From Macrostomum lignano (lineage: Eukaryota), in contig NIVC01000029.1 in NCBI GenBank assembly GCA_002269645.1, forward strand, positions 992,001 to 1,056,000: 64,000 bases of DNA, written 5' to 3'. Below, one piece after another: positions 1,072-30,788 of the stretch (within the stretch, counting starts at the first letter, position 1; every line of letters starts with the position of its first letter). Under the pieces are notes generated by a model, which had not been told where the DNA came from, searched no databases, and saw only the letters and a list, made by a program, of their open reading frames with translations. Made by a program: the position numbers and the translations under genes.

Positions 1072-1509
1072 GTAAGATAGTTCGCTGCTTTAAAGATAAA
1101 TTTTTACTTTTTTTCGCCATTTTCAGTACATTCTGTCCTTTTAGGCATCTGCTACAATTAGAAAAAATAATTGTCAACTTGTTAATCTGGAGCTTATGAA
1201 GGGAGTTGAAGCCTGAAGTTGAAATCTCTTCTGGCTCGTATAAAAACAAAATCGAAAATCAACTCTAATATGTTTTATGTGCTATATATATTTTTTGTTT
1301 AAAATTGTATTTTTATTACTTTAAACGGGCTAAATTCAATTAATTATTACTCTGCTCTTAAAGGCTATCCATTTTTTATCTTATTTGATATTGTATGATG
1401 CTTTTATTTTCAATAAAATGGTTCTTAAAGTCATTCGGCGTATTACATATTCAGATCATATTTTCACTGACTGTTGAATTGATAGAAAAGCCAATAGCGA
1501 AAGACGGAG

Positions 1510-2776
<1,267 letters not shown>

Positions 2777-3100
2777 ACACCAACTGCCCTGAGGTTTTTA
2801 TATTGGTACCGAAAAAATAAGCTTACACACGCGATGTAATCTCGCGATACGTTGAAAATGTTTATCAACTGGCTTCTTGTATTTATTTTTTCTCTTCTTC
2901 ACATATCGCCTAAAATAATATACGAGTAAACTATAACAAACCAGAACTCTTTCGATGCAGCTTTAACTCGTGCCAGAGCAACACACCAGCATAGACTGAT
3001 CGGTTGTACTTGTCTCGTTATTTTTATGTGCTTAAAACTCATACATATGGTTACATTTGAAAGTAGGGTCAGTATCGGTTAATAAAGATAATTAATAGTA

Positions 3101-4400
3101 GAACTACCAAGAGGGGGGGAATTCCCCCCCCCCCCTGACAATATTTTTTGCTGCACCGGAACGGAGCAACGCAGGCACACGAAGTTCAAGAACACGGGCT
3201 AACTTTTTGTTGCGAACCTTCTCAAACAAGAATCAAGTCGCCAGCCCTTCGGACCGTCGAGATATTCGACGATTCTGCCAGAAGGTCGGATTTTTCCCAT
3301 AAGCGCTAGTGTATTCAGTACACCCCTGTGCGCCAATCAGCACTGCGCCTCAGTGCAGCCTTGCCAAGCCTCCAAATTTCATCAGCACGTCGACCAAATG
3401 TGTCTGCATCAGCTCTGACTTCGTTGGTCAGAGCCTCAACTGCCGGACACCTTCAGCTAGTCTCCTAAGCATTTAGCCATCACCCCGACGCCGTCGGCAC
3501 CTTCAACGGGTGGCACCAGGGGAGTAAGGACACCTGAGCGTGATTTTTCATCATGCTCTTAACATTTCTGAATCATTAAAAGATGAAAAAACCGATTGAA
3601 TTTACTGGCTTCTTAAAAGCATAACCCTTTCTGCATAAAAATTGGGTTCAATATTATAGTTGAATAAACTAAACAGCTTCTCGAATAAAATATGTATGTA
3701 GCTCGTATGCATAAAAGTATGTGTAATAATAATATAAATATACAGCAACATGAGTTCAAGCTTAACTATAGCAATGTCCGTGCTTTAAAAATTCTGAGAG
3801 CTTCAGAAATGTAAAATCACGCTCAGGTGTCCTTACTCCCCTGGTGCCACCTGTTGAAGGTGCCGACGGCGTCGGGGTGATGGCTGAATGCTTGACTGAC
3901 TAGCTGAGGATGTCTGGCGGTTGATTCGTGCCCACTGTCGAGGCTTGATCGGTGAAACTAGAGAAATTCGCATCAAGGTGTTCATAGTCACCTGGTGCCA
4001 CCTGTTGAAGGTCTAGAAGCTCCGTCTGGGTGAAGGCCAGTAACCAACGAAGTCAGAGCTGATGCAGACACATTTGGTCGACGTGCTGATGAAATTTGGA
4101 GGCTTGGCAAGGCTGCACTGAGGCGCAGTGCTGATTGGCGCACAGGGGTGTACTGAATACACTAGCACTTATGGGAAAAATCCGACCTTCTGGCAGAATC
4201 GTCGAATATCTCGACGGTCCGAAGGGCTGGCGACTTGATTCTTGTTTGAGAAGGTGCGCAAAAAAAAGTTAGCCCGTGTTCTCGAACTTCGTGAGCCGGC
4301 GTTGCTCCGTTCTGGCGCACCAAAAAATATTGTCCACCTCTTGGTAGTTCGACGGGCGGAAAAATGGCTTGGTATTCCTACTGTTAATACGCTCGTATTT
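3101..4400. mobile_element. Unclassified dispersed repeat family R1 (about 450 bp, GC hairpin near one end): two copies in inverted orientation
   Basis: 3101-3548 is the reverse complement of about 3813-4345. The same family occurs at 8614-9085, 16938-17236 and 17445-17835. A GGGGGGAATTCCCCCC-type hairpin precedes CTTGGTAGTTC. Confidence 0.7.
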
Positions 4401-6536: not shown

Positions 6537-9500
6537 ATGAAGCTTCTGGCCTGCGTTCTGCTTGTTGCATCGGTAATTGAAAGTCTGATTGCCGCGACTT
6601 CGGGACTGTGTAAGTTAAAGAAATAAGTTGAGATGTTTTTGATAATTTTTCATTTAAAAAAAACAGCAATAATTTTGATGCTTCAGGCCGACTCCAAGTC
6701 ACGCGCAAAGCGATCGCCAGCTCATGGCAGTCATCTCACTATACGAGCTCTTATACTAGTACATCAAGGTGCTTTTACACTCGATCAGAAATCAGGACGG
6801 GACAGTGGGACTTCATTCACTCCGGAGATCGCAACTCTTCTGCAGTTGACGGATACCATTGGTTTGTCCTTTTGCTGAATCAAAGTGAAAGAATTCGGTC
6901 TGTCACTGTCGAAAGTAGAGGTGAGGGAGTTTCTGCTGCCAAATTTATGTATTTTTGCGAATATATATTCTGCGAAGGCACCAAGTCTACTATGTCATGA
7001 AAAAATGGAATCAAAAAAATTTCAGATGTACCAGGATATTCAGTAGAGTTCCGTGCAGCAGACGTTGAGCTCTTTGCCTCACAGTCGGACCTGAGCAGCC
7101 AGCTCGGGTCTGAGCACTGCGGCTCTCGGCAAATCAGTTCGGTTTTCAATTCAAAACCGTCGGCTTGGAGCTACTGCGGTAAAACAAAATCAAAAATAGA
7201 TAAAGGAGAACACTTGACTGTAAAATGCGACCGAACAGTAAGTACATTCCAGCAATTTGATGGGTCACTTACAATGATTTATAGATTTTATATTTAGAAC
7301 ATTAGTGTTGACACTTAAAAGTGTGACTACTAAAATTTTGTAAACTTTCAGGTCCGCATGTTGCTGCTTAGAAAGTTCGTTGCGAATCTGACAAATAGCT
7401 ACCATCAGTGCATGAACTTTGTGAACATGTGGCTTAATCGCATCGACTTTGAGGGTGAGTTAAATTGTGTATGCTTGCTCTAATATGAGAAGGCATGTTG
7501 GCATATAAGCATTGAGATATTTCTAGTTAAGATGAAAAAAATTTAATTTTTCGATCTGATTTGAAATGGATTTCAGTTTGGTAGATGCACACAAATCAGA
7601 AATCAGAATGACTTCGTACTTTCAGGTCCGCAAAGTCGATACAAAATCTCCACAGAGTTGGGCATCTGCAATGCAGCAACTCCAAGAGCTGATGTCAAAG
7701 TCACCTTTGAGTCTCCAGACGCATCCAAGCACTTGTGCAGAGCATTCGACTCTAAAGGCCAGCAGCTGACAATTAGAGCCGTGAAAAATCCAACCTGCGA
7801 CGTGGCTGACAATTTGCTGAGGTCCCAGTGGCTGTGCTCAAACTGCAGCAGCTCAGCCAATGTGTCTGTAATCTGCGATGCTAATCGGCATCAAGCTAAA
7901 ACAACTATTGGCACAGAATGCCCAAAAAATAGTAAGTTTTTTTAGCAAAAGTAAATGGCAATACTGGACAGACATTGGCGTCAAGTAATACGATTTGAAT
8001 CTTCGGTTAAAAAAACTATTTTAGAACCTTGGCCGCTGGTAATAGTCCTGACAGTTGTTTTTATTTTGTTAATATTGGCATCCGCTTTATTCGTCTTTGC
8101 TCGCAAGAAGGTAAGTATTGCATAGTACAAAGCTCCAAGCAAAAGAGCAAGATTGGTATTGATGCAACAATTACCTTGAGCTAATTTTTGTTTTTACAAA
8201 CCATCAGTTCTGCAGCCAGCCTCAAAGCAACAAAGATGAACCCCCAGCGGTCTCTTCTCATCCAATGGCCGCTTTGAACTGCGATGCGCCTCAGCAGAAA
8301 GCCGTGGCAGCAACCACAACCGATGTCACCCAGCCCAGCATATCGGTGCTGGAAGCAGAAGTTAATGAGGATAGCAATAGTTCTGAACTCTTCCGGGTGA
8401 GTCTGCGGATGATTGGAGAAGCGACTTTTTATATTTTGAGTAAAAGAGCGAAACCATAACAACATTTCATTTTTTATCTTTTCTTAAAAGCCTCAGTTAT
8501 GATTGGCCTGTGCTGATCTATCTTTCTATAGTTGTTTGCGAAAGTACGATTCTCAACGCTGAAATATATCCTCATATCAAAGCTATGCACATCTACGCCG
8601 AGGATGCTCAGCAGTTGAGGCTTGATCAGCGAAACTAGAGAAATTCGCAACAAGGGTGTCCATAGTCACCTGGTGCCACCTGCTGTAGGTCCAGAAGCCA
8701 GTAACCAACGAAGCCAGAGCTGATGCAGACGCATGTGGTCGACGTGCTGATGAAATTTGGAGACTTGGCAAGGCTGCACTAAGGCATAGTGCTGATTGGC
8801 GCACAGGGGTGTACTGAATACACTAGCGCTTATGGGAAAAATCTGACCTTCTGGCAGAATCGTCGAATATCTCGACGGTTCAGAGGGCTGAAGAATTGGT
8901 TCTTGTTTGATAAGGTGTACGTGCAACAAAAACTTAGCCCGTGTTCTTGAATTTCGTGTGCCTGCGTTGCTTCGTTTTGGCGCAGCAAAAGAAATTGTCA
9001 GGGAGGGATTCTATATGAAAAAAGGAAAATCCCCACCTTGGTTGTTTGACGGGCGGAAAAATGGCTTGGCATTCCTACTGTTAAAAGCGCAATTTGTCTC
9101 TTAAAAATATGATTTTTTGAGACGAAAATTCGACTTTTTAAAGCGCCTAATGGACGCTTTCTTACATTTCGATATTACGAAAATCACACGAAACTACATG
9201 AATCACATGAAACTCGTAGCATGTGTTTGCTTCGAGTTGGCTTGATAGTTGAGCTAACCAAGTTGATAGTTAAGCCAGGAGTTTAGTTTCTGAGCAGAAC
9301 AGATTTTTAAGCGCGAGGACATTTGAGGTCATGGCTTACGAGCTCGTACCATATATAGAAGTTATTCAAATAGGAGCAAATCGAAAAAACTCGATTTGTT
9401 TTCACTGCTGTGCGTGAGTCACAGTCTTGAAATAATCTCTTCCGAATGTTCCTCGCGTTAGTACTCGAGCAAGTAGTAATTATGTAAATTGAATAAGTCT

Positions 9501-9755
9501 ATATTATTTCTCTAAGCAAAAACAACGGCAATTTCTAGTGGCCATCGGTCGTATGCCATAAAATCGAACGTTGCTACCACTACTTGTTGAATTTGTCAAT
9601 CACCACTTCAGAGACAGATAACGAGCGAGTGCTGCTATGATACGGTTAACCCCGACGAACAGATGATGGAGTTGTCGCAGAGCAGTCGGGTCAATAGCGA
9701 TGCCACCGAATACTTGGAGATCATCTCCGATGGTATTGAACAGCAATCTGAATGA
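6537..9755 (+). CDS. Receptor paralog B: SP - F-type-lectin-like - Cys-rich/FN3-like - TM - ITIM-like/ITSM tail (about 448 aa)
   Basis: Exons 6537-6609 (MKLLACVLLVASVIESLIAATSGL), 6687-6920, 7026-7237, 7352-7454, 7626-7931, 8025-8110 (TM), 8208-8396 and 9612-9755 (CCYDTV...TEYLEIISDGI). All GT-AG with consistent phases; total 1347 nt, open. Confidence 0.85.
8614..9085 (+). mobile_element. R1 dispersed repeat copy in the last intron of B
   Basis: High similarity to about 3950-4400 and 17445-17835. Confidence 0.75.
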
Positions 9756-10559
9756 TAATTGTTCTGTTTTCATGGACACGTCTACGGAGTACTACTAGGT
9801 ATAATCATACAGAATTACATGTACTAAATTACTCCATATCTTTAGAAAGTAATCAACACTCCATGTAGGTATTCATAGCAAAACTTGTTGTGACTCACAT
9901 TTTTATGCTTTCTTCGAAGAAATTTTCGCCTTAACAACTTTTTTCCGATACGTGAATTGTCCATATTTGTTTATATTGGCTAAGTGTTAAAAACGGCCTA
10001 CTCATTCGTTAACGCACTGTTCAAAATTTTCCATGAGTTTTTTTCTTGTTATTTTTTTGAAAGTATACAGTATATTCATAAGAATTTCTGCGTGTTTGAA
10101 TTTGTTAGTTTGAATACATGCTGGTTTTCCTGTATGTACACATGTATTTCATCTATCAATCAACGCTACATTTATGGGATTATTCCCTAACTAAAATTGT
10201 GAGAACATCTCATCTCAAAAACCCCATCTTTGATTCCATAAAGACAACCAAAAAAAATACAGAAAAATTCGCGCTAACCACTTAAAGATGAGCAATGCGA
10301 GTGGAACATACTAGGGAGTATGTTTTAAACAATTTACACTTTCTTGCTAGGATTCTTGCTAAAATTAGCATTCAATCGAATGATCTTCAAATAAATTAAT
10401 TCAGGTGCTACATTGTAAGTATAAATGCACAAATGCATATATTTATTTCAAGCGCTTCCCAAGGTTACATGCCGGTAGATACATGTTTAAAACTAGAATT
10501 CAGTCTGGAAGAGGATCCTGGGTCGATGTAGGTCTTCATACATCGACTTTTGGGGACAT

Positions 10560-11897
10560 AAGTCGGGACACCGACAGGGATAGAGATGGGGTCAGGGATA
10601 GGAACACGAACAAGGACATGGGTCATAGACAGGGACAGAAAAAAGCCATGGGTCAGAGATAGGGACAAAGGGGACAGAGACATGGATCAGAGACAGGGAC
10701 AAGGGGGACAGAGACATGGATCAGAGACAGGGACAAGGGGGACAGAGACATGGGTCAGAGACAGGAACAGGGACATGGGTCAGAGACAGGAACAGGGACA
10801 TGGGTCAGAGACAGGGACAGGAACATGGGTCAGAGACAGGGACAGGAACATTGGTCAGAAACAAGAACAGGAAAAAACCATGGGTCAGAGACAGGGACAA
10901 GGGGGACAGAGACATGGATCAGAGACAGGGACAAGGGGGACAGAGACATGGATCAGAGACAAGGACAAGGGGGACAGAGACATGGATCAGAGACAGGGAC
11001 AAGGGGGACAGAGACATGGATCAGAGACAGGGACAAGGGGGACAGAGACATGGGTCAGAGACAGGGACAGGAACATGGGTCAGAGACAGGGACAGGAACA
11101 TTGGTCAGAAACAAGGACAGGAAAAAACCATGGGTCAGAGACAGGGACAAGGGGGACAGAGACATGGATCAGAGACAGGGACAAGGGGGACAGAGACATG
11201 GGTCAGAGACAGGGACAAGGGGGACAGAGACATGGGTCAGAGACAGGGACAGGAACATGGGTCAGAGACAGGGACAGGAACATTGGTCAGAAACAAGGAC
11301 AGGAAAAAACCATGGGTCAGAGACAGGGACAAGGGGGACAGAGACATGGGTCAGAGACAGGGACAAGGGGGACAGAGACATGGATCAGAGACAGGGACAA
11401 GGGGGACAGAGACATGGGTCAGAGACAGGAACAGGGACATGGGTCAGAGACAGGGACAGGAACATGGGTCAGAGACAGGGACAGGAACATGGGTCAGAGA
11501 CAGGGACAGGAACATGGGTCAGAGACAGGGACAGGAACATGGGTCAGAGACAGGGACAGGAACATGGGTCAGAAACAAGGACAGGAAAAAACCATGGGTC
11601 ACAGACAGGGACAAGGGGGACAGGGACATGGGTCAGAGACAGGGACAAGGGGGACAGAGACATGGATCAGAGACAGGGACAAGGGGGACAGAGACATGGG
11701 TCAGAGACAGGAACAGGGACATGGGTCAGAGACAGGGACAGGAACATGGGTCAGAGACAGGGACAGGAACATGGGTCAGAGACAGGGACAGGAACATGGG
11801 TCAGAGACAGGGACAGGAACATGGGTCAGAAACAAGGACAGGAAAAAACCATGGGTCAGAGACAGGGACAAGGGGGACAGGGATGGAGACAGAGACA
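10560..11897. repeat. Complex purine-rich minisatellite (CATGGGTCAGAGACAGGGACAAG... units of about 23-31 bp)
   Basis: Visible tandem units; all three + frames are open only because of base composition. Confidence 0.95.
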
Positions 11898-12962
11898 GGA
11901 AGTCGTGTCTCACAGCTCAACACCGAGAAGAAAATGATTACGAACGATTTCTATTCTGAATGCACGCTAGACGTTTGTTGTCGTTATGTCGTTCTGATCC
12001 CAGCTTAAATCGGTATTACTCGTAGGTTGCACAATGATCATTCATCAAAGCTAAAAGGATTGATAACAATGTTTTTAACTGAATGGTGCACCACATCAAT
12101 TTGATGATCAAATAGGTCCGTCAAAGTTTACGTCTTTGTGCTGGATTGCAGGATGGCATCTGTCGTCGCCTAAAACCAGATTCAACAGGAACCAAGTCAA
12201 CATATTGTGCACTAGATTTAGTTCGTACTCTAACTATTTTAGGCTGCTAACTACTGATCGTCTTCTCGTCCAGCGCCTCGGGAGAATATAGCAGCCACAC
12301 GACAGGGGGTCTTTTTCAATTTTAAAATTTTCGGTAAGCGATTTCTCACATACGCGATACATCGCTTCGTGACCATATAATGATGCAGCTGTTACCAGAA
12401 TATTGCAACTATTGTTTACTTGTAGCTGGAGTTTTGAAATTGTTGCACACAGCGGAGGTGAGCTTACAAAACGCTGAATTTCACTGACCAGAGATCCAGT
12501 ATATTACAGCATCGTTAAAGACAATAATTCGTGAAATTAGCTATTATTATTGAAGTGAGGGGCTTCCAGAATATAATCGAAACGGCCGAGACAGAACCAC
12601 CTAGACCTGAAAGATCTACGTAAATAGCTAAAGATTTATAAACCGAACGGAACACGAGGTAAACAGGGTTCTTTAAATAGTCAAAGATGAATTTACAATT
12701 TAATGATAGCCCTTCAAGCAGATTATGGTAAGTGTCCAAAATGTCCAAATGCACACTAATAATGTAAACTAGTTGGTTTCAAACGCTTTGCCAAAACAAA
12801 TTTGGCTAGGAAATGAGCGTCAGCTGCGCTGCAGGTTGGTATAAATATTCTGAATATTCGCGAATGAAAAGCAATATCATTAACGTTCATTGCAGAGTGA
12901 CGAAATTTAGTTCAGCGATTGCAGTCTTACAAGCGTAAGCTTTAAAGATACTTTTATTGAGT

Positions 12963-15900
12963 ATGATTAATTCCGCACTGATATCTGCTTTAATTTACAT
13001 TTTTATGGCAACTTGCCTGCTCCAATATTTTGCGGAGTCTGCATTTGAATGTAAGTAACAGAAATTTTCGTAAATGTCTCAATAGTCAATAATAAATTCT
13101 ATCACAGTTTTGAATGCTTACATGCATTACATATTTTAAATTACTACTAGGTACTGAATTTGTAACTACTGGTGCAGGAGAAAAGACCTGGCAGTCATCG
13201 AGTTTCAAAGAGTACACTAAAGGCCCGTTTATTTGTGGGATTGGGGGAAGTCAGTTGGACGGGGCCTTCAAATCAGCTGACGAAGGCTCAGCCGCTGACA
13301 AAGGCTATCACTGGTTGGCCGTCCAGCTTAGAAGTACTGTTTGGACAGATGGGTTTGTTATCTCACGTGAGTATATCTATTCATATATTATGGTTATTGA
13401 TTTTATGATAATATTTAATTTTAATATGCAAGTAAAGTGGTATCCCCAAAATGCAGCAATTACAAGCGAAAGCCAGCTAGCAGAGAGAATTGAAGTTTGG
13501 ACAACAACAGAAACAATTGGATTTGGTTCTGAAAAGTGCAACTCCAGAAATATGAGCTCAGTATTTGAGACTAACAAGAAATATTGGACTTTCTGTGGAT
13601 CTTCTAAGCCAACTGCAATTCAAGTGAACTGTTCCAGTGTCCAGGAGGTGAGCTTATCAGTCTATAATTCAGTAAAGGTGTGTTAATAACTTAACACACT
13701 TATATACCAAGCAATTCCCTCAAAAAAATTCAGGCCAAAACAGTACTGCTTCGCAAGCCTGCGTGGAACAACAAAACCAACGCAATTGAGAGCATGGCTT
13801 TTAGTATTTTGGCCTATAAGTATATCTCGATCGATAGTGAGTTAAGATTACATACTTTTTACTCTTTTTCATTAGCCATAAAATACATTTATTTATTCTT
13901 TCAGTTACCTTTGACATAGCACCGCCGTCTAATATAAGCTCGAATACCAGTGCCAAGGTGAGATGCAATGTGAGTTGCATTGATAGTTTGGCAAGTATCA
14001 AATTAATACACTTGAGCACTAACCGGACACTTGCAACTGGAAATGAGACCTATGTAATCGACTCTGTGAATGAGGAAGATTATGGAGTCTATGCGTGCAG
14101 TGTTGGTGGAGTTGTTGTCAGCTCTGGCTATCTATCAGTTGCTTGTGAGTTGTCCAGTTCTCATTGAAATTAGTCCATTAAGATTAGACACACCAGACTT
14201 GATTCATTTTATCATTTTGGCTAGGCATTACAGTACCCATAAAAATTAATTCATTTATACTTTTCAGCTAAGGAAACTAAAGAGCTTCAAAGGCCATCCT
14301 CACCTGAACTTACTCAGTTCTACATATACATATTGATGGCAGTTTCCTCGATTCTGTTAATAGCTGTTGTCGCAGGAGCGATATTTGCTTGTAGAAAAAT
14401 GGTATTAATATGCAACTTTTCTGATCTTTTGTGTCTTTCCTTATGTACAATCCATGCGCCTACGCAGCAATTAAAGTACAGAATTATTAATTTAAATAAC
14501 AAAATATTAAAATATTTCCAACAGGCTATTGGAAGCCATCAAACGCTTGAACGAAAGCTAGCAACTGTAAGGTGAGTAATTTATGCTACACATATATATA
14601 GTAATTTGCTAGAACGACTTGTTTATGTGTCGTTCAATGAACAACAAGATTATTGGTCAAGAAACAATTTTCTAGCTTCTGAGAAACAAGGACCACTGGA
14701 ACATCTAGTCTAGTAGTCCTTGCTGAGAAATACAGAACGTATTTGTATTTGTGTGAGTCAAACTGTCTATATACCAGTTTTGTAGCTTTTTAAGAACTAT
14801 TAAAAGAGCTATTAAAAGAATCCAATAAAAAAACTTAGGTTTTCATTCACTAAGTTAGACAACTTAAAGTTTATTGCTCGAGTAAATTGAATCTTTAATT
14901 AGGCAATATCAACAGGCAGCTAAAAATGATATATTGCGTAAAATAGGAAGCTTTTATTCGGACTAGACTGAAATCAAACACGTTTGCGATTTCATGTCTA
15001 AATAGAATTTGCTATCATATAGTTACTGATGGCTATTAGATTTAGCTACCGAGCTAATGATACTGAGCTATTTGTTATGAGTGTTTCTAAGAAAGAAGGG
15101 AGAAGCGAGGTACCCTATCCTTCTACGTGCTACGTGTATTTGTCGGTCGACCGCTTTTAGTCTTATTCAGGCACTGATTGAATATAATTGTTAGCCATGC
15201 ATATGGATTGAGATATATAGCTATATAATGAAATTATAATTAGTGTGACAGTACCTGCATGTAAATCAAACTATTTCGATGTGGGCAGCTAATCCAAGCC
15301 AAAATACCTGTTTTTAGAGTCAATCTATTAAACCTTGCATGCATAAAATTTATAATAGCTATTAAAATAATTTTTATAAATTTATCACGAGAAAAAATAT
15401 TTACATGAATTCACATCAACGTTGCCTATAAAGTTGAGGATGTAAAAATTAACACATTTGGTCTAGTCGTAAGATTCGATAAAGAATCAGGCGCAATCTG
15501 CCACCGCATCCATTTTAGAGCCAGAAGTTCGCAGGAAATCGCCTTTTTTCCACATTTATCCCCTTTGGGGAAGCCTCTTCGTAGAGCACAGTCAAGTTCC
15601 CATTTAGATCTGAACAACAATTTTTAGCCTTGATTTTGTTCTTTGACTTTTCGCTTCCAAATTGAGTTCAATTCACACATAAAGCATTTCTCCGTGTGTC
15701 AGCAATGTGAAGGAAGGACTTGCGCGACATCAAAGAACTCGGCCACAAATTGACGGAAAATATTCGAAAACGTTTCGTTCGAAAAGTCTCCTCCAGGGAG
15801 CCTTGTACCGGAACCAATGTCCATGTGTGTTAATTTATCAGCTCTAAAGCTGTTGGAATACTGCGAGAAAATAAAATTTATTGGATTGCTAAAACATAAT

Positions 15901-16759
15901 TGTATCATTGTATAAGTCTTTCAATGAATGGAACCTACTACGCATTACTCCACCCTTACATAAAAAATGTTTCAATTGCTTTTTCCAGACACTCAACTGA
16001 GAAAGTTTCAAATGAAGAACCACCAACGCCTGACAACGGAGTGGCGGTGAGGCATGAAAATTTGCATCCAAATTCTGCTATTTGCATGGTTGAACTTCCA
16101 AAGTCTAATGACAACTATCAGGTCAGTCAGAGTAAAAAATCCATTGAGAAAGCATCTTCGTGCTCAATTAAACTGTCTGCGAAAGTGTCTGAAATTCATA
16201 TTAACTAGTAATTTCCCCATGGTTCAAAGTCAAAAAAAGATTTTTAAATATCCTAAGTCAAAAAGATCAGACACAGGATTGAGTTGTAAATATTTTTCTT
16301 CGATTCTCTGTATACAGTGATGCATCAGATGAAAAGACATTTGTATTGAAAAAAGTAACAAACAGTGATTTTACATGTATTGCTTTCAATAAAAGAAGCA
16401 GCTCGGCATAGTTTGGGACTACAGCAGGTAAATATAATTATTTACACGCTAGTAATGCATAACTGCCATCAATTATTTTTTTTAATATCGCAACTCAAGT
16501 ATTTACCGAAGTAAAATAGTCGCTTATATACAACTTATAGTGGCAGTTTTCCCAATAAAAATTTACGGATTTGTAAGACAAATTTAGTTTAAAACTACTT
16601 CAGCTTCAGTCAGATATCCGATATATAATAATACTTCAGGAAGGAAACAGCTGCACCTACGCTTCGCTCATGCCTTCAACAGCTGAACCAAATTCTAACG
16701 AACAGCGGCCAGAAAGTGAAGTCACGGAATATTTGATGATTATTAAGGATGGTATTTGA
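12963..16759 (+). CDS. Receptor paralog C: SP - F-type-lectin-like - Ig - TM - ITIM-like/ITSM tail
   Basis: Exons 12963-13050 (signal peptide), 13151-13366, 13433-13647, 13734-13836 (103 nt), 13905-14144 (Ig: VRCNVSC...DYGVYAC), 14268-14401 (TM), 14525-14571, 15989-16046 (or -16121) and 16640-16759 (CTYASL...TEYLMIIKDGI*). Phases are consistent. Confidence 0.8.
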
Positions 16760-16937
16760 TACTGAAGAAAGAATAGTTATTAACCAACATTGTGACTGTG
16801 TTCTAGCTCGTAGAAGCTTTGTAATTGGAAGCATGTAATTCTAAATTAAAATCTACAATGTTTTGAGGAAATATTTACATGCATGATAAAATTTAGTAAT
16901 TTATTAAACTACGTGCATATGAATGCTTTAACAGTAA

Positions 16938-17835
16938 GCCAACTCTTTGTTGCGCACCTTCTCAAACAATAATCAAGTCGCCAGCCGTCCGGAACGTCGA
17001 GATATTCGACGATTCTGCTAGAAGGTCGGATTTTTCCCATAAGCGCTAGTGTATTCAGTTCACCCCTGTGCGCCAATCAGCAATTTCACCAGCACGTCGA
17101 TCACATGCGTCTGCATCAGCTCTGGCTTCGTTGGTCACTGGCCTTCACCCAGGCGGAGCTTCTAGACCTTCAACAGGTGGCACCAGGTGACTATGGACAC
17201 CCTGATGCGAATTTCTCTAGTTTCGCTGATCAAGCATTAATAATGGGCTAACATTAACACCTGGTCATTTTCAGCTAGACTCTCAAACGTGAGACGTGAT
17301 GACGTAATTAGTTAATTGAACCGTAAATTGAACCGAATTTTCGCCAAGAGAAAAAATGACAAAAAATTATCAACTTTTCTATATGGACTCAAGATCAAGT
17401 AGAATTAACAAAAGTTGCTAAAACAATTTTTAAATTCATTTTTTCGGTGTCCATAGTCACCTGGTGCCACCTGTTGAAGGTCTAGAAGCTCCGCCTGGGT
17501 GAAGGCCAGTGACCAACGAAGCTAGAGCTGATGCAGACACATGTGGTCGACGTGCTGGTGAAATTTGGAGGCTTGGCAAGGCTGCACTGAGGCGCAGTGC
17601 TGATTGGCGCACAGGGGTGAACTGAATACACTGGCGCTTATGGGAAAAATCGGACTTCCTAGAAAAATCGTTGATTATCTCGACGTTCCAGAGGGCTGGC
17701 GACTTGATTCTTGTTTGAGAGGGTGCGCAACAAATAGTTGGCCCGTGTTCTTGAATTTCGTGTGCCTGCGTTGCTCCGTTCCGGCGCAGCAAAAAAGTTG
17801 TCGGGGGGGATCCCCCCCTCTTGGTAGTTCTGCTG
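16938..17835. mobile_element. R1 dispersed repeat, second inverted pair
   Basis: 16938-17236 (minus, truncated) and 17445-17835 (plus) match the copies at 3101-4400. Confidence 0.7.
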
Positions 17836-18474
17836 TAAATCGAATTCGTAGCTGTCTTTTGCGTTTTCAAGAATCCCCCACAGCGCAAGTGAAATAAAAA
17901 TCAGCAAAATGGAATACTTAGTCTTTAAATTACTCGTAATCTAAGAGCTCTGTACTTTTATGGGCTGTTTTTAAACACCTTTTAGTAAGCATCTCATTCC
18001 GATTAATTCACTCAAACTCGAAATGCCTACACTCGTCTGAGCATTGTATTTCTTTTCATTCGATTTTTCTGTTTTAAAGTACGACTCCAGATCCTCATTT
18101 CTACTTTTATGATAAAATTATTACATTTTTAAATTCAAGTGCCTAACTGTACATTTCTCAAAATCTGAGAGACTTGAATTAAATATTTGGCTAACTAATG
18201 CACATATGTAACTTAGGAGGAAAGAGTAGCGAAAATCAGTGAACGATGTTAAATGTAACTCAAAACATATAACTCAAAGCCCATGCAGTCACCGAGCCTC
18301 AACAACCAGAGTTTCAGATGACCAATTATGACGTGAAAAACCTGGCTATTTTAGGGAAAATACCTGAATCAGGATGAAATCGAATGTTCTAAGTGGTAGA
18401 ATTATTGATAGTTCGAGTAGTAGCAAGTTAGGGGTCTTCGTGTTTTCATTTTTTCTCCTGATATCTTAGCGCCG

Positions 18475-18881: not shown

Positions 18882-21800
18882 TCAATCGCTAACGTAAACT
18901 GACCGAGGCGGCGAAACGTTGTCAGTCCTATTGGTTGTCATGGCTACCATGTCATCCACGTAGACGCTTTGAGCAGCTCGCTGCATTCTCAGCTCGGCTG
19001 GAGGATCGCTGGGTTGGTTAGGAGGATGAGCACAACTCTGGAACTTTTAAGTGTGGCCGTTTATCAAAGTTATCAAATAATTTTTCGGAATTAATTTTTT
19101 CTAAATTTATTTTGGATGGGATTCAGTTCGATATATAGCTCTTTTTAAAACAAAATCTTGCTCAGTTTGATGCCTTGCAGATAACATGAAGACTACTGCC
19201 TCTTATTACAGACCTTTGACTCTCAATCTTACTATTTACATTAAGATTTCATGTCAAGCTTACCTTCTCGTAGTAGATCAGGATTGCAAGGGATATCAAT
19301 ATGATTAATACAATTATCTCGGTCAATAACACGACTAACAGCCAAAAATCTGAAAGTTTGATCATAGAAGGCTTCATTTTACTATTCAAAGAATGTTCAA
19401 TAACTATTTCGTAGATAAATGATAAACAACTTACTCTCATACACGTAGGGACAGCGTGTTTTGATAAGCTTTCTAACTTGATGCTGATCAGCCTGACAGA
19501 TTACAGACACATTGGCTGAGCTGCTGCAGTTTGAGCACAGCCACTGGGACCTCAGCACATTGTCAGCCACATCGCATGTTGGATTTTTCAGCGCAGTAAT
19601 TGTCAGCTGCTGGCCTTTAGAGTCGAATGCTCTGCACACGTGCGTGGATGCGTCTGGCGACTCAAATGTGACTTTGACATCACTGGTTGGAGATATGAAT
19701 TTGCAGATGCCCAACTCTGTGGAGATTTCGTGACGACTTTGCGGACCTGAAGAATAAAAACTTAAGAATTTTAGAGCACTTTGATTTGTTTTTGTTCAGT
19801 TGAAGTAAATCTCTACTTTGCCTCTCTATTGTCTACCCTGATTTACTCCTTGGCTGTCCAAAGAGCTTCTGGTGTTTGGCGATTTTCTCCGCTAGATACT
19901 GCTCAGCAATTTTTCATTGAATTTGAAACAAAAAGGGTACAGACAGAAACTACTGTATACGAAACATTGATTTCCTACCAGTAATTTTGTTAATTACAAG
20001 GTACGAGTTTCAGAGAAACGATTGGTCTCTCTAATCTGGTGTATAGCTATTAAGTTCCTTATAACTTTTCCAACCTATTTGCGCTTACACACTGAATTTA
20101 TTCAAAGATTTGCTTACTGAACTAATTGATTTTTGGCTATGGTAGCAAGGCTGGCACAGCAGTATTTAATTTGGTCCAACAAGCATCAATTTGGTCCATT
20201 GCAGCTATGAAACCTAATCATGAATTACAGCTGAGTAATGCAATTTATTTCATCAAATTTCACTGTACTAATCAATACAAGGTGACGTCAAAAATGCAAT
20301 TTTCTCAGCAATAACAAAATAGCATATTTTAGCATGACCAAAACTCCGCTTCGATCACAAGCACATTGCGTTCGTTTGACAGTCTAGCCTATGTTCCACG
20401 ATTCTGTGACTGATCTTGCTTCTCTGCGGAAGATGCAAATGAAGTATTGCTTTTAGTATTGCTTGTGACAGATATGTCTAAATTAAAATCTAAGGGGTGA
20501 ACTTATGGACCAAATCGATGCAGCGGGTCCATGAAATTTGCTAGCAGGAAATCTGCTAGCCGAAGTTTGCTAGCCGAAATGTGCTAGCCGAAATCTGCTA
20601 GCCGAAGTTTGCTAGCCGAAATGTGCTAGCCGAAATCCGCTAGCCGAAATCTGCTAGCCGAAATCTGCTAGCCGAAGTTTGCTAGCAGGAATTTCTTTGT
20701 AGCTAGCACTCGTACGTCAAGAATCAGAATGTAATTTATATACAAAATGTGCTTGTTAATTTTATTCTTCAAGTTCGTTGGCTCTGTTGTTTTGTTTGCC
20801 CGCTCTCGGTAGTCAGAGTAAATTAAGAAGGCAATCTGTTGTGGGGACGACTTAATCTGGACGACTTAATCTGCCACCTAGCCTTCGCCGTGGGTTCTCG
20901 TACATGTACGTGTTAAAACGCAATCAGTAGATGACGTCATAGACAAAAAGAAAATAAGATTTAGGTTTTAACGTAGGTGGATTAAAAAGTTCATATACAA
21001 GATATTGAATAAAGTAAATATATTACATCCATGATCACAGGGTAAGAGCTTGTGGGCCACACCTGCATAGAGTTTTTGCTTGTACACAATGGAAAATATC
21101 TATACATTAACAATACATATAGCGATAGTAAATTGTACCTTGGAAATACATGTATCTAACTATAGATACTGTACACCAACATGTGTGTTACTGTCTGCTA
21201 AAGTACTGTATATGCTAAAACTGCACTTGGAAATCGTCAAAATCATTTATATTTTTGTCCTATTTTACTCGTAGACATTTGATAATGTTTTAGCATTATC
21301 AGCTGTAAGGCCGTAGTTCAGGTAGCTCAGGCAGCTGTAGTTCAGGTAGTTAAATTTAAACTTATCTATACACACAACTTTCAGTCTTAATGGCTGGTAG
21401 TGGCAGTATATGGTATATAAGTTATATATTTACTCGTACGAATCAAAGCAGCTCAAATCGGAATCAAAACACAGCAAATAACATGCAACAGCTACGAGAG
21501 CAAGGCAGCTAGCAAAATCCTCGCTAGCAAAATTCCTGCTAGCAGATTTCGGCTAGCAAAATCCTCGCTAGCAAACTTCAGCTAGCAGATTTCGGCTAGC
21601 ACATTTCGGCTAGCAAACTTCGGCTAGCACATTTCGGCTAGCACATTTCGGCTAGCAAACTTCGGCTGGCAAACTTCGGCTAGCACATTTCGGCTAGCAA
21701 ACTTCGGCTGGCAAACTTCGGCAAGCACATTTCGGCTAGCGGATTTCGGCTAGCAAACTTCGGCTAGCAAACTTCGGCTAGCAAACTTCAGCTAGCAGAT

Positions 21801-27162: not shown

Positions 27163-28499
27163 GTAAGTCGCAAAAGTTCAAATTTCAAGATATACTTCCA
27201 GCGCTCGCCTACAAGCCGCGCTTTCAATTTGACATCCACTGTCAGCTAGCTCTAGCTGTTACTCATGTTACTCTAGTATTACTATAGCAGTGCCACAAGT
27301 ACGCATAGTAACCCCTAGGTAATTTTATCAGCAGGGACTTCAAACATCTGCATCTACGGCCATTGATCTCTTGAACAGATCCCGTCGGGTAGTACAACTT
27401 GCCAAGTTTGTCAGACTGGGTCCGAATGAGGGCGCAGCCGGCCCATCCACAGCGCCACCGCAATCTTGCTCTTCGATGCGCCCTCACGTAAACGTATTTG
27501 CATTGACAACCCTTGATGCCTCTATTGATCTCCAGACCCCAGGCCGAGCACTCTTTATTCTCGAAGTCATCAAAAATTAGGGCATCAGAAGCAGTAGAGG
27601 CAGCTGCAGAAATGAAGGCAATGGATTGCTAACCTATATCTGTTGTCGATTGACTCAAGCGCTTAAAGTGCTAAAATAAATATTTTCTCTTCGTTGGAAT
27701 AGTCAGTTTTATTCTAGATAAAAAATCGTTGAAATAAGGAAATTTAGTAAAAACATTTCAGTATGACGATTCAGTTTTTTACTTTGTAGCATAATTAAGA
27801 AAAAATAGGTTCAGTTGATATTACTTATTCGAATCGTTTCTGCCTTTCCAGTGGTTCATATCTACGTTGAAGAATGACTTTCTACTGAAAAATATTGTTG
27901 CGGATACTCTGCATGGAAGCTACATGGGAATACGAAAACAATAGATTATTAGGATATAAATTTAGGAATTGAAGCTGATTAAGATAAAAAATTCAGGGGC
28001 ATTTTACAGCAAGATGGAATCAAACCCGGTCGATAATGTCTGGATCTTATATGAATTCGATGGATTACACCCATTAGCTAGTAGGCTGAACAGGACTTCT
28101 ACTTATGAAGCCAGACACGTCCATGATGGTCTCCTTTTAATGTTAAATAATTATAGTATATTTGGCGTTATACTGATATTAATATTGGCGCATAATTTTT
28201 GTTGCATTTTTTTTCTCCGAAAGAACACTTTTCAAATTAAAAGTGTGGTGTGGGCGATTTCTCTTATTTACTGAGTATTCATAGAACCATTGCTTAAGCT
28301 TTGAAAAGCAGTATAACAAAACATTGTATACCATTCAATGTACATGTGTATCACGCAATTTCTCGAATTGCATAATTGCTAATCCACATCAATACCATTT
28401 GTACAATAAAACAAGAAGCATCAAAGTAAATTAAGCTGCAGTGGCCAACACCTTTTACGAGTAGTATCCAGTTACAACCACCAGGTTCTAAAGTGACTC

Positions 28500-29111
28500 G
28501 ACACCGCAGTGTCTGGCACCGAAGTGTCTGGCATCGAAGTGTCTGGCACCAAAGTGTCTGGCACCGAAGTGTCTGGCACCGAAGTGTCTGGCACCAAAGT
28601 GTCTGGCACCGAAGTGTCTGGCACCGCAGTGTCTGGCACCGAAGTGTCTGGCACCGAAGTGTCTTGGGCTAAAGTGTCTGGCATCGAAGTGTCTGGCATC
28701 GAAGTGTCTGGCACCGAAGTGTCTGGGGCTAAAGTGACTCGACACCGAAGTGTCTGGCGCCAAAGTGTCTGGCGCCGAAGTGTCTGGCACCGAAGTGTCT
28801 GGCGCCGAAGTGTCTGGCACCGAAGTGTCTGGCACCGCAGTGTCTGGCATCGAAGTGTCTGGCATCGAAGTGTCTGGCGCCGAAGTGTCTGGCATCGAAG
28901 TGTCTGGCATCGAAGTGTCTGGCATCGAAGCGTCTTGCAACGAAGTGTCTGGCATCGAAGTGTCTGGCATCGAAGTGTCTGGCATCGAAGTGTCTGGCAT
29001 CGAAGTGTGGCATCGAAGCGTCTTGCAACGAAGTGTCTGGCATCGAAGTGTCTGGCATCGAAGTGTCTGGCATCGAAGTGTCTGGCACCGAAGTGTCTGG
29101 CACCGAAGTGT
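28500..29111. repeat. 15-bp minisatellite (CACCGAAGTGTCTGG)n
   Basis: Visible tandem units; source of the PDTSV and SGTEV pseudo-ORFs. Confidence 0.95.
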
Positions 29112-29717
29112 CCGGTATTCTTCTATACTTATACGAGTTTCTATTGTGTCAGTGTTAAAGTATGCATATAACGGATTATAGTTGTAGCAATACCGTTATT
29201 TGTGCCTCGTTTATCCTAATTAGTTCTTACAGCTCTACTTAAAACCAAAGGTAACTAATCCAGTAATCCTTAGGAGGTCTAACTGCTGGTTGAGTTACCA
29301 AGGACTTGGAGAAACAACAGTGCATTAAATTATTGCCAGCAACAAAGTGGACTACAATAATGATTACAGCTTGAAGCTTGTATGAAGCTTATTCAAGCTA
29401 GCCCTTCTGCTGGAAAAACGAAGTCAAATATGGCCAAGTGCAAATGTTGTACAGTCTTTGTACTTGTATTGATGCTGAAAATCCAAATCAAGATAAATCT
29501 CTCATTGTTTAATAATGGTCACTTAATGCCCGTCGGTTTATGTTATTTATAACTAAAGATTCACTTTACAAGATGGTATAAATAGTATAATTTGTTTGAT
29601 TTAGTAAGTTTATTCTGGTTATCTGTGTCTGCGTAAGATTGGATGGAAGTTTAGCAAAGCAATTTTGGTGTGTGAATTTACTAAACGCGTTCTCTCATAG
29701 ATAGTAGTTGCAGCGCC

Positions 29718-30327
29718 TTGGGGCTTTAGCACCAAGGGGCTTTAGCACCAAGGGGCTTTAGCACCAAGGGGCTTTAGCACCAAGGGGCTTTAGCACCAAG
29801 GGGCTTTAGCACCAAGGGGCTTTAGCACCAAGGGGCTTTAGCACCAAGGGGCTTTAGCACCAAGGGGCTTTAGCACCAAGGGGCTTTAGCACCAAGGGGC
29901 TTTAGCACCAAGGGGCTTTAGCACCAAGGGGCTTTAGCACCAAGGGGCTTTAGCACCAAGGGGCTTTAGCACCAAGGGGCTTTAGCACCAAGGGGCTTTA
30001 GCACCAAGGGGCTTTAGCACCAAGGGGCTTTAGCACCAAGGGGCTTTAGCACCAAGGGGCTTTAGCACCAAGGGGCTTTAGCACCAAGGGGCTTTAGCAC
30101 CAAGGGGCTTTAGCACCAAGGGGCTTTAGCACCAAGGGGCTTTAGCACCAAGGGGCTTTAGCACCAAGGGGCTTTAGCACCAAGTTGCTTAAGCACCAAG
30201 GGGCTTTAGCACCAAGGGGCTTTAGCACCAAGAGGCTTTAGCACCAAGGGGCTTTAGCACCAAGAGGCTTTAGCACCAAGGGGCTTTAGCACCAAGGGGC
30301 TTTAGCACCAAGGGGCTTTAGCACCAA
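29718..30327. repeat. 16-bp minisatellite (AGCACCAAGGGGCTTT)n
   Basis: About 38 near-perfect units. Confidence 0.95.
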
Positions 30328-30788
30328 TGCAAAATGCACTAAATGCAAAATTCTAAAAATGCTTGGCAACTTTTCTGAGAACTGTAAAATCACACGAAAT
30401 CAAATAAGCACAACTATAAAGATATTTCCAATCGGCCGAGTATGGCGAGCTTGCGGTTTCTAGAATTAGTAAGGCTTACTTTAAATAGCAGTAGAAGTTA
30501 TCTTTAACAGTTACCGTCTGCAGCCCTTCACAATACTTCTTAGTGTAATTTTTAGCTTTTGACCGGAATTAATAAATTATAATCTACTTATATATAAATA
30601 AAGTTACTATCTGTGCAAGCATTGGCAACTAAATTTACTGATTTCATCAATGAACACGTTGCACCAGTTTCACGGTTTTGAATATATCTAGAAAAGCGCT
30701 GCCGAACAAAAATAACAACAATTTAATATTCTCTCACTCAGTTCTCGGAACTTCATCAGTCGAAAAACATTGTTAGCTAGGATTGAAT

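What the first reader, a model, noticed from the sequence alone, without database searches (positions are those of the whole stretch)
9612..16759. Siglec-like dual tyrosine tail (CxYxx[V/L] + TEYLxI) conserved between divergent paralogs B and C
Seen: the last exons encode CCYDTV-x-TEYLEIISDGI (B, 9612-9755) and CTYASL-x-TEYLMIIKDGI (C, 16640-16759), with tyrosines 25 and 24 residues apart, while the rest of the tails is unalignable. Knowledge: TxYxx[V/I] is the ITSM consensus, and human CD33 has LHYASL + TEYSEV. The proximal motif has Cys rather than the canonical S/I/V/L at -2. Inference: convergent SHP-type phosphatase-recruiting inhibitory lectin receptors.
Basis: partly seen in the sequence, partly recalled or inferred. 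Interest (0 to 1): 0.8.

Follow-up and report, generated by a model that had tools for sequence, protein, structure and literature searches.

The report
Flatworm receptor family with dual-tyrosine tail
Two neighbouring genes of the flatworm Macrostomum lignano encode membrane receptors whose otherwise diverged inner tails keep the same pair of tyrosine motifs, a layout that resembles the docking sites of vertebrate inhibitory immune receptors, but whose function has not been tested.

Summary
Exons 9612-9755 and 16640-16759 encode ...CCYDTV-x19-TEYLEIISDGI... and ...CTYASL-x18-TEYLMIIKDGI*, with tyrosines 25 and 24 residues apart. The similarity is far beyond chance: Smith-Waterman score 60 against 21.4±4.4 in shuffles, reached by 0 of 20,000.

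The window is Macrostomum lignano DNA. Both exons splice in frame (GT-AG, phase 0) onto upstream exons. Each gene then encodes a signal peptide, a galactose-binding-domain-like module (discoidin/F-lectin fold, seen only at fold level), an Ig or Cys-rich domain, a transmembrane segment and a tail. An independent UniRef model (A0A1I8J1S8) matches my gene B model residue for residue, tail exon included. The existing model of gene C stops before its tail exon.

The family was found only in M. lignano. Distant members keep the tail: P0007 has CSYLSV + TVYLEIV, and P0021 has VVYAQV + TEYTEIV (transcript-based as I recall that annotation). The distal motif fits the ITSM pattern in all five members of this tail class. 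The proximal motif has Cys at -2 in three members and is canonical only in P0021.

Other members carry different tyrosine tails (…SVYVSD*, …SVYVYE*, …GVYID*). These proteins are not Siglecs. SH2/SHP-type docking is the best reading but is untested. Interest is moderate.

The parts
6537..6609 (+). Gene B exon 1: signal peptide MKLLACVLLVASVIESLIAATSGL
   Evidence: Manual GT-AG model. Identical to UniRef A0A1I8J1S8.
6687..7454 (+). Gene B exons 2-4 (6687-6920, 7026-7237, 7352-7454): N-terminal galactose-binding-domain-like module
   Evidence: AF2 model has pLDDT 69.6 and pTM 0.77. Foldseek matches F5/8-C, CBM32 and F-lectin folds at E 6.5e-5 to about 2e-3 over the 50 listed matches (24 at E <= 0.001), TM about 0.5. 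Pfam F5_F8_type_C matches are only weak.
7626..7931 (+). Gene B exon 5: Cys-rich membrane-proximal domain, which takes the place of the Ig exon seen in C
   Evidence: Paralogous exons lie at 128-520, 19400-19795(-) and 38496-38876. No Pfam match.
8025..8110 (+). Gene B exon 6: transmembrane segment PWPLVIVLTVVFILLILASALFVFA followed by RKK
   Evidence: Ends in phase 0.
8208..8396 (+). Gene B exon 7: juxtamembrane cytoplasmic exon (FCSQPQSNKDEPPA...SSELFR)
   Evidence: Phase 0 at both ends. Its homolog in P0088 ends ...SKLFR.
9612..9755 (+). Gene B last exon: dual-tyrosine tail. A tandem acceptor lies at 9612 or 9618. The stop codon is 9753-9755.
   Evidence: The UniRef model uses 9618.
9630..9647 (+). 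B proximal motif CCYDTV
9705..9737 (+). B distal motif TEYLEIISDGI (TEYLEI fits TxYxx[V/I])
12963..13050 (+). Gene C exon 1 (new here): signal peptide MINSALISALIYIFMATCLLQYFAESAFE. A phase-1 donor recreates the junction Cys also seen in B.
   Evidence: Not present in UniRef A0A1I8G0L0.
13151..13836 (+). Gene C exons 2-4 (13151-13366, 13433-13647, 13734-13836): galactose-binding-domain-like module
   Evidence: Homologous to the corresponding exons of B, F and G.
13905..14144 (+). Gene C exon 5: Ig domain
   Evidence: Pfam Ig_2 at E 1.2e-4, below the cut-off. It is 42% identical to the Ig exon of F, which passes the Ig_3 cut-off.
14268..14401 (+). Gene C exon 6: transmembrane segment FYIYILMAVSSILLIAVVAGAIFAC followed by RKM
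   Evidence: Matches UniRef A0A1I8G0L0.
14525..16046 (+). Gene C cytoplasmic exons 7 and 8 (14525-14571, 15989-16046), with the intron between them. Alternative phase-0 donors lie after 16040 and 16124.
16640..16759 (+). Gene C last exon: dual-tyrosine tail. The stop codon is 16757-16759.
   Evidence: Absent from the existing UniRef model, which ends at ...DNGV.
16652..16669 (+). C proximal motif CTYASL
16724..16756 (+). C distal motif TEYLMIIKDGI (TEYLMI fits TxYxx[V/I])

Best explanation
B and C are two tandem paralogs of a receptor family found only in Macrostomum lignano. Each encodes a type I membrane protein: a signal peptide, a galactose-binding-domain-like (discoidin/F-lectin fold) module, an Ig domain and/or a Cys-rich stalk, one transmembrane helix and a disordered-looking cytoplasmic tail.

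The last exon encodes an inherited two-tyrosine module. Its proximal part is C-x-Y-x-[ST]-[VL]-x-P. Its distal part, 24-28 residues later, is T-[EV]-Y-[LT]-[EDM]-I-[IV]. This module has been kept while the rest of the tail diverged.

The most likely mechanism is inferred, not shown. After the ectodomain is engaged, a Src-type kinase phosphorylates the two tyrosines, both of which have acidic residues upstream. The phosphotyrosines then dock SH2-domain effectors. The spacing and the pY+1/pY+3 residues fit two-site binding by a tandem-SH2 protein. A Csw/Shp2-type phosphatase is the leading candidate, which would make these modulatory, probably inhibitory, receptors.

My estimates: about 0.55 that the module is a phosphotyrosine docking site, and about 0.3 that the partner is specifically an SHP-type phosphatase.
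For: Shown:
- The motifs are present and in frame.
- My gene B model is reproduced exactly by an independent annotation that includes the tail exon.
- The B-C tail similarity scores 60 against 21.4±4.4 in shuffles, reached by 0 of 20,000. Synonymous differences within the conserved block argue for purifying selection.
- The same module occurs in distant family members. P0007 has ...ECSYLSVDP...TVYLEIVADAN* with a gap of 26. P0021/PAA49974.1 has VVYAQV...TEYTEIVKSNA* with a gap of 27, a canonical ITIM plus ITSM. P0088/PAA92527.1 has the distal TEYLDIV only.
- The tail exon is a single phase-0 terminal exon in other loci too.
- The tails of B, C, P0007 and P0088 contain exactly two tyrosines each.
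- The topology is signal peptide, then TM, then basic residues.

From the literature:
- Siglec-5/9 carry LHYASL + TEYSEI, and CD33 carries Y340/Y358 (PMC2722167, PMC9570199).
- Csw/Shp2 predates Bilateria (PMC7260276).
- Among the human gene names used to label M. lignano genes in PMC5946080 is PTPN11.

From my own knowledge, not checked here: tyrosine spacing in PD-1, BTLA, SIRPα, PZR and Siglec-5/7/9 is about 22-26. PZR's VIYAQL/VVYADI resemble P0021's VVYAQV and P0028's ETYADI.
Against: - There is no evidence of expression for B or C themselves. Neither has an NCBI (PAA) protein record in the searched database, and the only model of C lacks the tail exon.
- The proximal motif has Cys at -2, outside the ITIM rule, in B, C and P0007. 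B has Asp at pY+1.
- All four motifs also fit YxxΦ.
- pY-[LT]-[ED]-I fits Src-family SH2 domains (pYEEI-like) as well as SHP SH2 domains, so the signal could be activating or inhibitory.
- The presence of Csw/Shp2 in M. lignano rests only on a gene-name list.
- Conservation beyond the six-residue cores (P at +5, II.DGI) is not explained by SH2 binding alone.
- Close paralogs have lost or replaced the module: D, F and the proximal half in P0088.
Confidence: 0.5

Rival explanations
1. The tyrosine motifs are sorting signals rather than signalling sites. YxxΦ motifs (YDTV, YASL, YLEI, YLMI) would bind the μ subunits of clathrin adaptors and drive endocytosis or lysosomal delivery of a cargo-binding, lectin-like receptor.
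For: All four motifs in B and C, and those of P0007 and P0021, fit YxxΦ. The ectodomain has a carbohydrate-binding-module-like fold. From my own knowledge, endocytic lectin receptors commonly use such signals.
Against: YxxΦ does not require the conserved T at -2, E at -1, upstream acidic residues or C at -2. Other family members end in Y-I-D*, Y-I-L* or Y-V-Y-E*, where no +3 residue or no Φ exists. A fixed 24-28 residue spacing between two sorting signals has no obvious rationale. An acidic di-leucine reading (EYLEII) fails in P0021 (EYTEIV) and P0088 (EYLDIV).
Confidence: 0.2
2. The tail is an activating phosphotyrosine module. pY-[LT]-[ED]-I would dock Src-family kinase SH2 domains (pYEEI-like) or a Syk/Shark-type tandem-SH2 kinase, so B and C would be activating, for example phagocytic or adhesion, receptors.
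For: The distal cores YLEI, YLDI, YTEI and YADI have an acidic residue at +2 and Ile at +3. Acidic residues lie upstream, as in hemITAMs. From my own knowledge, flatworms possess Src and Syk family kinases (schistosome SmTK3/4/5). Botryllus FcoR tails mix ITIM and hemITAM (PMC12582321).
Against: The tyrosine spacing of 24-28 is well outside the ITAM range of 6-12 intervening residues. There is no DEDG-type tri-acidic hemITAM context. The T at -2 and the A/L at +1 with V/L/I at +3 of the proximal site are more typical of SHP-binding sites.
Confidence: 0.15
3. The motifs have no function. The tail exons are conserved only by shared ancestry, or B and C are unexpressed or decaying copies in a repeat-rich cluster.
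For: There is no transcript evidence for B or C. The cluster holds broken or interrupted copies, namely E, D and F, the last carrying a retroelement. The generic motif pattern is not enriched.
Against: Both genes have complete open reading frames with canonical splice sites across 8-9 exons. Conservation is block-wise, with synonymous changes, in paralogs about 25% identical. The same module occurs in two further subfamilies on other contigs. One of these, P0021, has an NCBI (PAA) annotation that I believe to be transcript-based; the other, P0007, is known only from a UniRef model.
Confidence: 0.1

Closest known systems
CD33-related Siglecs (Siglec-5, Siglec-9, CD33)
   Same: A type I membrane protein with an N-terminal putative glycan-binding module. 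The cytoplasmic tail has a membrane-proximal YxxL/V motif and a distal TEYxE[IV]-type ITSM-like motif. YASL + TEYLMI in C and TEYLEI in B compare with LHYASL + TEYSEI/TEYSEV (PMC2722167, PMC9570199). The tyrosine spacing is similar: 24-25 here and 18 in CD33 (PMC9570199).
   Different: No homology. The N-terminal module has a galactose-binding-domain-like fold, not a V-set Ig fold with the sialic-acid Arg. B has no recognisable Ig domain. The -2 residue of the proximal motif is Cys. No binding or signalling data exist. The phylum is Platyhelminthes.
Dual-ITIM SHP-2 docking receptors (PZR/MPZL1, SIRPα, PECAM-1, PD-1, BTLA)
   Same: Two tyrosine motifs about 22-27 residues apart in a disordered tail. 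The cores resemble each other: VVYAQV in P0021, ETYADI in P0028 and TEYxxI. These comparisons are from my own knowledge.
   Different: The ectodomains are unrelated. The first motif is canonical in only one family member. No functional evidence.
Botryllus schlosseri FcoR allorecognition co-receptors
   Same: An invertebrate, lineage-specific, clustered and rapidly diversifying receptor family whose members carry alternative tyrosine-based tails (ITIM, hemITAM, ITSM-like) (PMC12582321). Here the cluster mixes a dual-motif tail (B, C) with short ...VY[VI]xx* tails (D, F).
   Different: The FcoR proteins are pure IgSF proteins. There is no sequence relationship. In Botryllus, expression and genetics are documented. 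Here nothing is.
F-type lectins, discoidin (F5/8 type C) domains and CBM32
   Same: The predicted fold of the N-terminal module matches at TM about 0.5 and Foldseek E 6.5e-5 to about 2e-3. Pfam F5_F8_type_C and F5_F8_type_C_2 give weak matches in several members.
   Different: All Pfam matches are below the gathering thresholds. A profile search against PDB sequences found nothing relevant. The same fold also occurs in non-lectins such as APC10, SUN and XRCC1. Sugar-binding residues were not established.

Membership tests
ITSM (immunoreceptor tyrosine-based switch motif) | Sequence T-x-Y-x-x-[V/I] | tested here: met
   TEYLEI (B), TEYLMI (C), TVYLEI (P0007), TEYTEI (P0021) and TEYLDI (P0088) fit. 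P0028 (ETYADI) does not.
ITSM / ITIM | The motif lies in the cytoplasmic tail of a membrane receptor | tested here: met
   Gene models give signal peptide, ectodomain, hydrophobic 23-25-mer, basic residues and then the tail. B's model equals UniRef A0A1I8J1S8. Topology is inferred from sequence only.
ITSM / ITIM | The tyrosine is phosphorylated and binds SH2 effectors (SHP-1/2, SHIP, SAP) | not testable with these tools
   Needs biochemistry. Only indirect hints exist that M. lignano has a PTPN11-like gene (PMC5946080, PMC7260276).
ITIM | Sequence [S/I/V/L]-x-Y-x-x-[I/V/L] | tested here: not met
   The proximal motifs CCYDTV (B), CTYASL (C) and CSYLSV (P0007) have Cys at -2. Only P0021 (VVYAQV) is canonical.
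ITAM | Two YxxL/I motifs separated by 6-12 residues | tested here: not met
   The tyrosines are 24-28 apart, which leaves 20 or more residues between the cores.
Siglec family | An N-terminal V-set Ig domain that binds sialic acid through a conserved Arg, followed by C2-set Ig domains | tested here: not met
   The N-terminal module is predicted as a galactose-binding-domain-like jelly roll. It has no Ig match in Pfam. B has no recognisable Ig domain, and C has one Ig exon after the N-terminal module.
F5/8 type C (discoidin) / F-type lectin domain | Match to the family profile above the curated threshold | tested here: not met
   Best Pfam E-values are 0.008-0.03, about 15 bits against cut-offs near 28. 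No hit in a profile search of PDB sequences.
F5/8 type C (discoidin) / F-type lectin domain | Galactose-binding-domain-like β-sandwich fold | tested here: met
   An AF2 model with pTM 0.77 matches F5/8-C domains, CBM32 modules and fucolectins 3cqo and 1k12 at TM 0.4-0.58. Model confidence is moderate (pLDDT 69.6, alignment of 6 sequences).
F-type lectin | A carbohydrate-binding residue set and actual sugar binding | not tested
   No reliable residue-level alignment to a solved lectin was obtained.
YxxΦ adaptor-binding sorting signal | Y-x-x-[LIVMF] in a cytoplasmic tail | tested here: met
   YDTV, YLEI, YASL and YLMI fit. The pattern is too loose to be diagnostic: one search shows no enrichment of the related dual pattern.
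Immunoglobulin superfamily | An Ig domain profile match | tested here: inconclusive
   C's exon gives Ig_2 at E 1.2e-4, 22.7 bits, below the cut-off of 27. The homologous exon of F gives Ig_3 at 31.9 bits, above the cut-off of 30. B lacks this exon.

The most novel reading that the evidence does not exclude
Macrostomum lignano has independently evolved a clustered, fast-diversifying family of receptors that combine a lectin-like (discoidin/F-lectin fold) module with Ig domains. Members would carry alternative signalling tails: a dual ITIM-like/ITSM module (B, C, P0007, P0021) set against short C-terminal ...VY[VI]xx tails (D, F, P0022, P0062). That would be a paired inhibitory/activating recognition system analogous to Siglecs, KIRs or Botryllus FcoR, used for immune, self/non-self or mate/sperm recognition in a flatworm.
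Probability: 0.2. Interest if true: 0.75.

Novelty: new variant of a known kind. Interest (0 to 1): 0.45.

Why it matters
Receptors with tyrosine-based inhibitory or switch motifs are central to vertebrate immune regulation. They have been documented in only a few invertebrate lineages.

A flatworm-specific, tandemly duplicated family would show that this signalling logic was assembled again from different parts in Platyhelminthes. The family pairs a carbohydrate-binding-type fold with a conserved two-tyrosine tail laid out as in Siglecs, PZR and PD-1.

M. lignano is transgenic and RNAi-tractable, so the prediction can be tested directly. If the tails instead prove to be sorting signals, the family is still an uncharacterised, lineage-restricted receptor expansion, currently annotated only as 'hypothetical' or with misleading automatic names.

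Tried and rejected
1. A tail-only profile (A5) searched against the 5.8-billion-protein database. Only 3 candidates shared words with the query and none scored. The word index is unsuited to 40-residue motifs.
2. A full-family profile through the word-indexed search. It did recover the exact UniRef model of gene B.
3. A profile of the N-terminal domain against PDB sequences. It returned only spurious reductase hits at E about 0.1.
4. Generic dual-tyrosine and TEY regular expressions over six frames. They were not enriched over shuffles, so the pattern alone is not evidence.
5. A search for a B-type tail downstream of the near-copy D. blastn and tblastn found only transposon fragments. D has a different tail.
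6. Literature searches for ITIM in flatworms, for M. lignano lectin/Ig receptors, and for the Mlig gene identifiers. Nothing relevant was found.
7. Readings rejected:
   - ITAM, because the spacing is wrong.
   - Acidic di-leucine signal (EYLEII), because it is not conserved in P0021 or P0088.
   - C-terminal PDZ ligand (DGI*), because B carries five more residues after DGI.
   - Recent gene conversion of the tail exon, because identity is only block-wise and synonymous differences are present.


Full report
**What the window is.** A composite of gene C's exons had one match in the 5.8-billion-protein database. It was UniRef A0A1I8G0L0 of Macrostomum lignano, identical over the exons it contains. 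A family profile later recovered UniRef A0A1I8J1S8, 99% identical to my gene B model. The window is therefore intron-containing genomic DNA of this free-living flatworm.

**Checking the observation.** The tyrosines are 25 (B) and 24 (C) residues apart. The B and C tails align with a Smith-Waterman score of 60, against 21.4±4.4 for 20,000 shuffles of C, none of which reached 60. tblastn gives E about 4e-4 within the window and finds no third copy.

The aligned positions are C-x-Y-x-[ST]-[VL]-x-P and TEYLxIIxDGI. Nothing else in the 78- and 112-residue tails aligns. In the distal block, 26 of 36 bases are identical, and four of the nine shared residues use different synonymous codons. This indicates old divergence under constraint rather than a recent copy.

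A loose dual-tyrosine pattern near a stop codon is no commoner in the window than in shuffles (5 against 4.9). The motif pattern alone therefore means little. The evidence is the extended, positioned homology.

**Gene models.** I built GT-AG models by hand.

Gene B has these exons:
- 6537-6609 (signal peptide)
- 6687-6920, 7026-7237 and 7352-7454 (N-terminal module)
- 7626-7931 (Cys-rich domain)
- 8025-8110 (TM, then RKK)
- 8208-8396
- 9612-9755

Every junction from the TM exon onward is phase 0, so the tail is in frame. With the tandem acceptor at 9618 the model equals A0A1I8J1S8 residue for residue. An independent annotation thus includes the tail exon in this frame.

Gene C has these exons:
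- 12963-13050 (a signal-peptide exon not in the database model; its phase-1 donor recreates the same junction Cys as in B)
- 13151-13366, 13433-13647 and 13734-13836
- 13905-14144 (Ig)
- 14268-14401 (TM, then RKM)
- 14525-14571
- 15989-16046
- 16640-16759

The alternative donors after 16040 and 16124 are also phase 0. The existing UniRef model of C skips one exon and ends at ...DNGV, so C's tail exon has no outside support. I found no NCBI (PAA) protein record for either B or C.

**The ectodomain.** Pfam gives only faint F5_F8_type_C matches, with best E-values of 0.008-0.03, all below threshold. An AF2 model of B's N-terminal module was built from an alignment of six window paralogs and has pLDDT 69.6 and pTM 0.77. 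It matches galactose-binding-domain-like folds in the PDB. These include F5/8 type C domains of Bacteroides chitobiases, CBM32 modules, and the fucolectins 3cqo and 1k12, at E 6.5e-5 to about 2e-3 (24 matches at E <= 0.001) and TM 0.4-0.58. The list also includes non-lectins such as APC10 and SUN2.

A profile search of PDB sequences found nothing. 'Lectin-like' is thus a fold-level inference. It is not an Ig-type lectin, so the proteins are not Siglec relatives. C and F have an Ig exon, and F's passes the Ig_3 cut-off. B instead has a Cys-rich domain with no family match.

**The family.** A profile of B, C, D and F was searched against 1.84 billion representative proteins. It gave 78 hits at E <= 0.001. 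Of the ten N-terminal-module hits I looked up (of about 28 retrieved), nine are M. lignano proteins and one is an unnamed metagenome fragment. The remaining hits are generic Ig proteins.

The window itself holds seven copies:
- A: partial, at 1-1144.
- B.
- C.
- D: minus strand, 23.3-18.9 kb, about 80% identical to B.
- E: about 26 kb, apparently degenerate.
- F: 31.2-39.3 kb.
- G: from 61.5 kb, cut by the window end.

**Tails across the family.** The B/C-type module recurs in distant members:
- P0007 (A0A1I8H6B9): ...PECSYLSVDPNAEP...DCTVYLEIVADAN*, gap 26.
- P0021 (PAA49974.1, 804 aa; 20% identical to B in the family alignment)...PDVVYAQV...LATEYTEIVKSNA*, gap 27.
- P0088 (PAA92527.1, 63% identical to B): only the distal ...DVTEYLDIVSIGVVRQPK*, plus a non-homologous FYINS 18 residues upstream.
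- P0028: MEYEQP...ETYADIYCDE*, gap 28.

In the genome loci of P0021 and P0088 the module is again the last, phase-0 exon. The P0002 locus holds the same tail exon, just past the annotated end of that gene. The PAA proteins come from the GCA_002269645.1 annotation, which to my knowledge is transcriptome-based. If so, tails of this kind are transcribed in at least some members.

The distal motif fits TxYxx[V/I] in five of five members of this tail class. The proximal motif fits [SIVL]xYxx[IVL] only in P0021. B, C and P0007 share Cys at -2.

A second set of members has different tyrosine tails:
- D: ...QSVYVDDM-x-PRSVYVSD*.
- F: ...HRTSVYVYE*.
- P0022 and P0009: ...DYENSEYKLEN..G[VI]YI[DL]*.
- P0062: ...LVYIN*.
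- A, tentatively...IAV|YILSF*.

Tyrosine-based C-termini are therefore a family trait, and the cluster mixes tail types.

**Mechanism.** Four things are shown:
- Both genes have intact reading frames.
- Both have type I topology.
- The two-tyrosine terminal exon is inherited and constrained.
- The ectodomain has a carbohydrate-binding-type fold.

The rest is inferred. The tyrosines would be phosphorylated, given the acidic residues upstream and the fact that they are the only tyrosines in four of the tails. They would then dock SH2 proteins.

The layout matches Siglec-5/9 (LHYASL + TEYSEI, described as ITIM plus ITSM-like; PMC2722167) and CD33 (Y340/Y358; PMC9570199). From my own knowledge, it also matches the 22-27-residue spacing of SHP-2-binding pairs in PZR, SIRPα, PD-1 and BTLA. 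Csw/Shp2 is older than Bilateria (PMC7260276). PTPN11 also appears among the human gene names used to label M. lignano genes in PMC5946080. A tandem-SH2 phosphatase is thus the leading candidate, but it is only a candidate.

**Rivals.**
- YxxΦ sorting signals. All four motifs fit. This reading does not explain T-E at -2/-1, the fixed spacing, or the ...YID* type ends.
- Activating docking of Src- or Syk-type SH2 domains. The pY-x-[ED]-I cores fit, but the spacing excludes a classical ITAM.
- Non-functional relics. The intact reading frames and cross-subfamily conservation argue against this.

**Comparison and novelty.** The tail works like, or at least looks like, the CD33-related Siglec or dual-ITIM design. 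The proteins are not members of the Siglec family, because the V-set criterion is not met. They also do not meet the strict ITIM rule at the proximal site. The nearest invertebrate analogue in organisation is the Botryllus FcoR family, which has clustered genes with swapped ITIM/hemITAM tails (PMC12582321).

I found no literature on such receptors in flatworms. I class this as a new variant of a known kind, of moderate interest. The function rests on short linear motifs and remains untested.

Noticed in passing
window 18885-19046 (-), 39218-39316 (+), 940-1071 and 1127-1144 (+): A second tail class occurs in the same receptor cluster. D ends ...QSVYVDDM...PRSVYVSD*, with its two SVYV tyrosines 22 residues apart. 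F ends ...AEHRTSVYVYE*. A tentatively ends ...EPIAV|YILSF*. Other M. lignano members end GVYID*, GIYIL* and LVYIN*. This hints at paired receptors with alternative signalling ends.
   Followed up: partly
window 32242-37373: A Ty3/gypsy-type LTR retroelement sits inside gene F. Its ORF at 33314-36595 (-) has aspartyl protease, RVT_1, RNase H and integrase zinc-finger domains. Identical 117-nt stretches lie at 32242-32358 and 37257-37373. It separates F's N-terminal-module exons (31.2-31.9 kb) from the next exon at about 37.6 kb.
   Followed up: partly
window 53103-53440: An interstitial telomere-type repeat, (CTAACC)n, which is the complement of TTAGGG. It has about 57 copies with 95% matches.
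   Followed up: no
window 27300-32100 and 57200-62400: A segmental duplication of about 5 kb carries the 5' halves of F and G. It includes 15-nt minisatellites (28502-29112, 58346-60149) and 16-nt arrays (29720-30327, 60145-60601).
   Followed up: partly
window 6537-9755 (+) and 23323-18885 (-): B and D form an inverted duplication about 80% identical at the protein level. D lacks any B-type tail. UniRef A0A1I8G181 (P0004) is a chimeric model that runs from D into the antisense strand of B's tail exon.
   Followed up: yes
window 9610-9618: A tandem (NAGNAG-like) acceptor, cag-aga-cag, lies at B's tail exon. Splicing at 9612 or 9618 adds or removes Arg-Gln without changing the frame.
   Followed up: yes
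window 40956-43352 (-), 46012-47127 (+), 3139-4377, 8586-9100, 16900-17900: Other mobile-element remains are present. They include a 798-aa DUF1258 ORF and a mariner/Mos1-like transposase split over two frames. A repeat family also has copies in B's last intron and just downstream of C.
   Followed up: partly
window 1510-2779 and 10588-11899: There is a very long (GACA)n microsatellite of about 318 copies. There is also a G/A-rich minisatellite with 25/34/182-nt periods. Both give long spurious ORFs between genes A, B and C.
   Followed up: no
L001 11968-12053; L003 12060-12131: In the B-like paralog P0088 the last intron is only 86 nt. The tail exon starts just before the distal motif, so the proximal motif is absent. 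The annotated isoform P0002 stops before this exon, although the exon is present and identical in its locus.
   Followed up: yes
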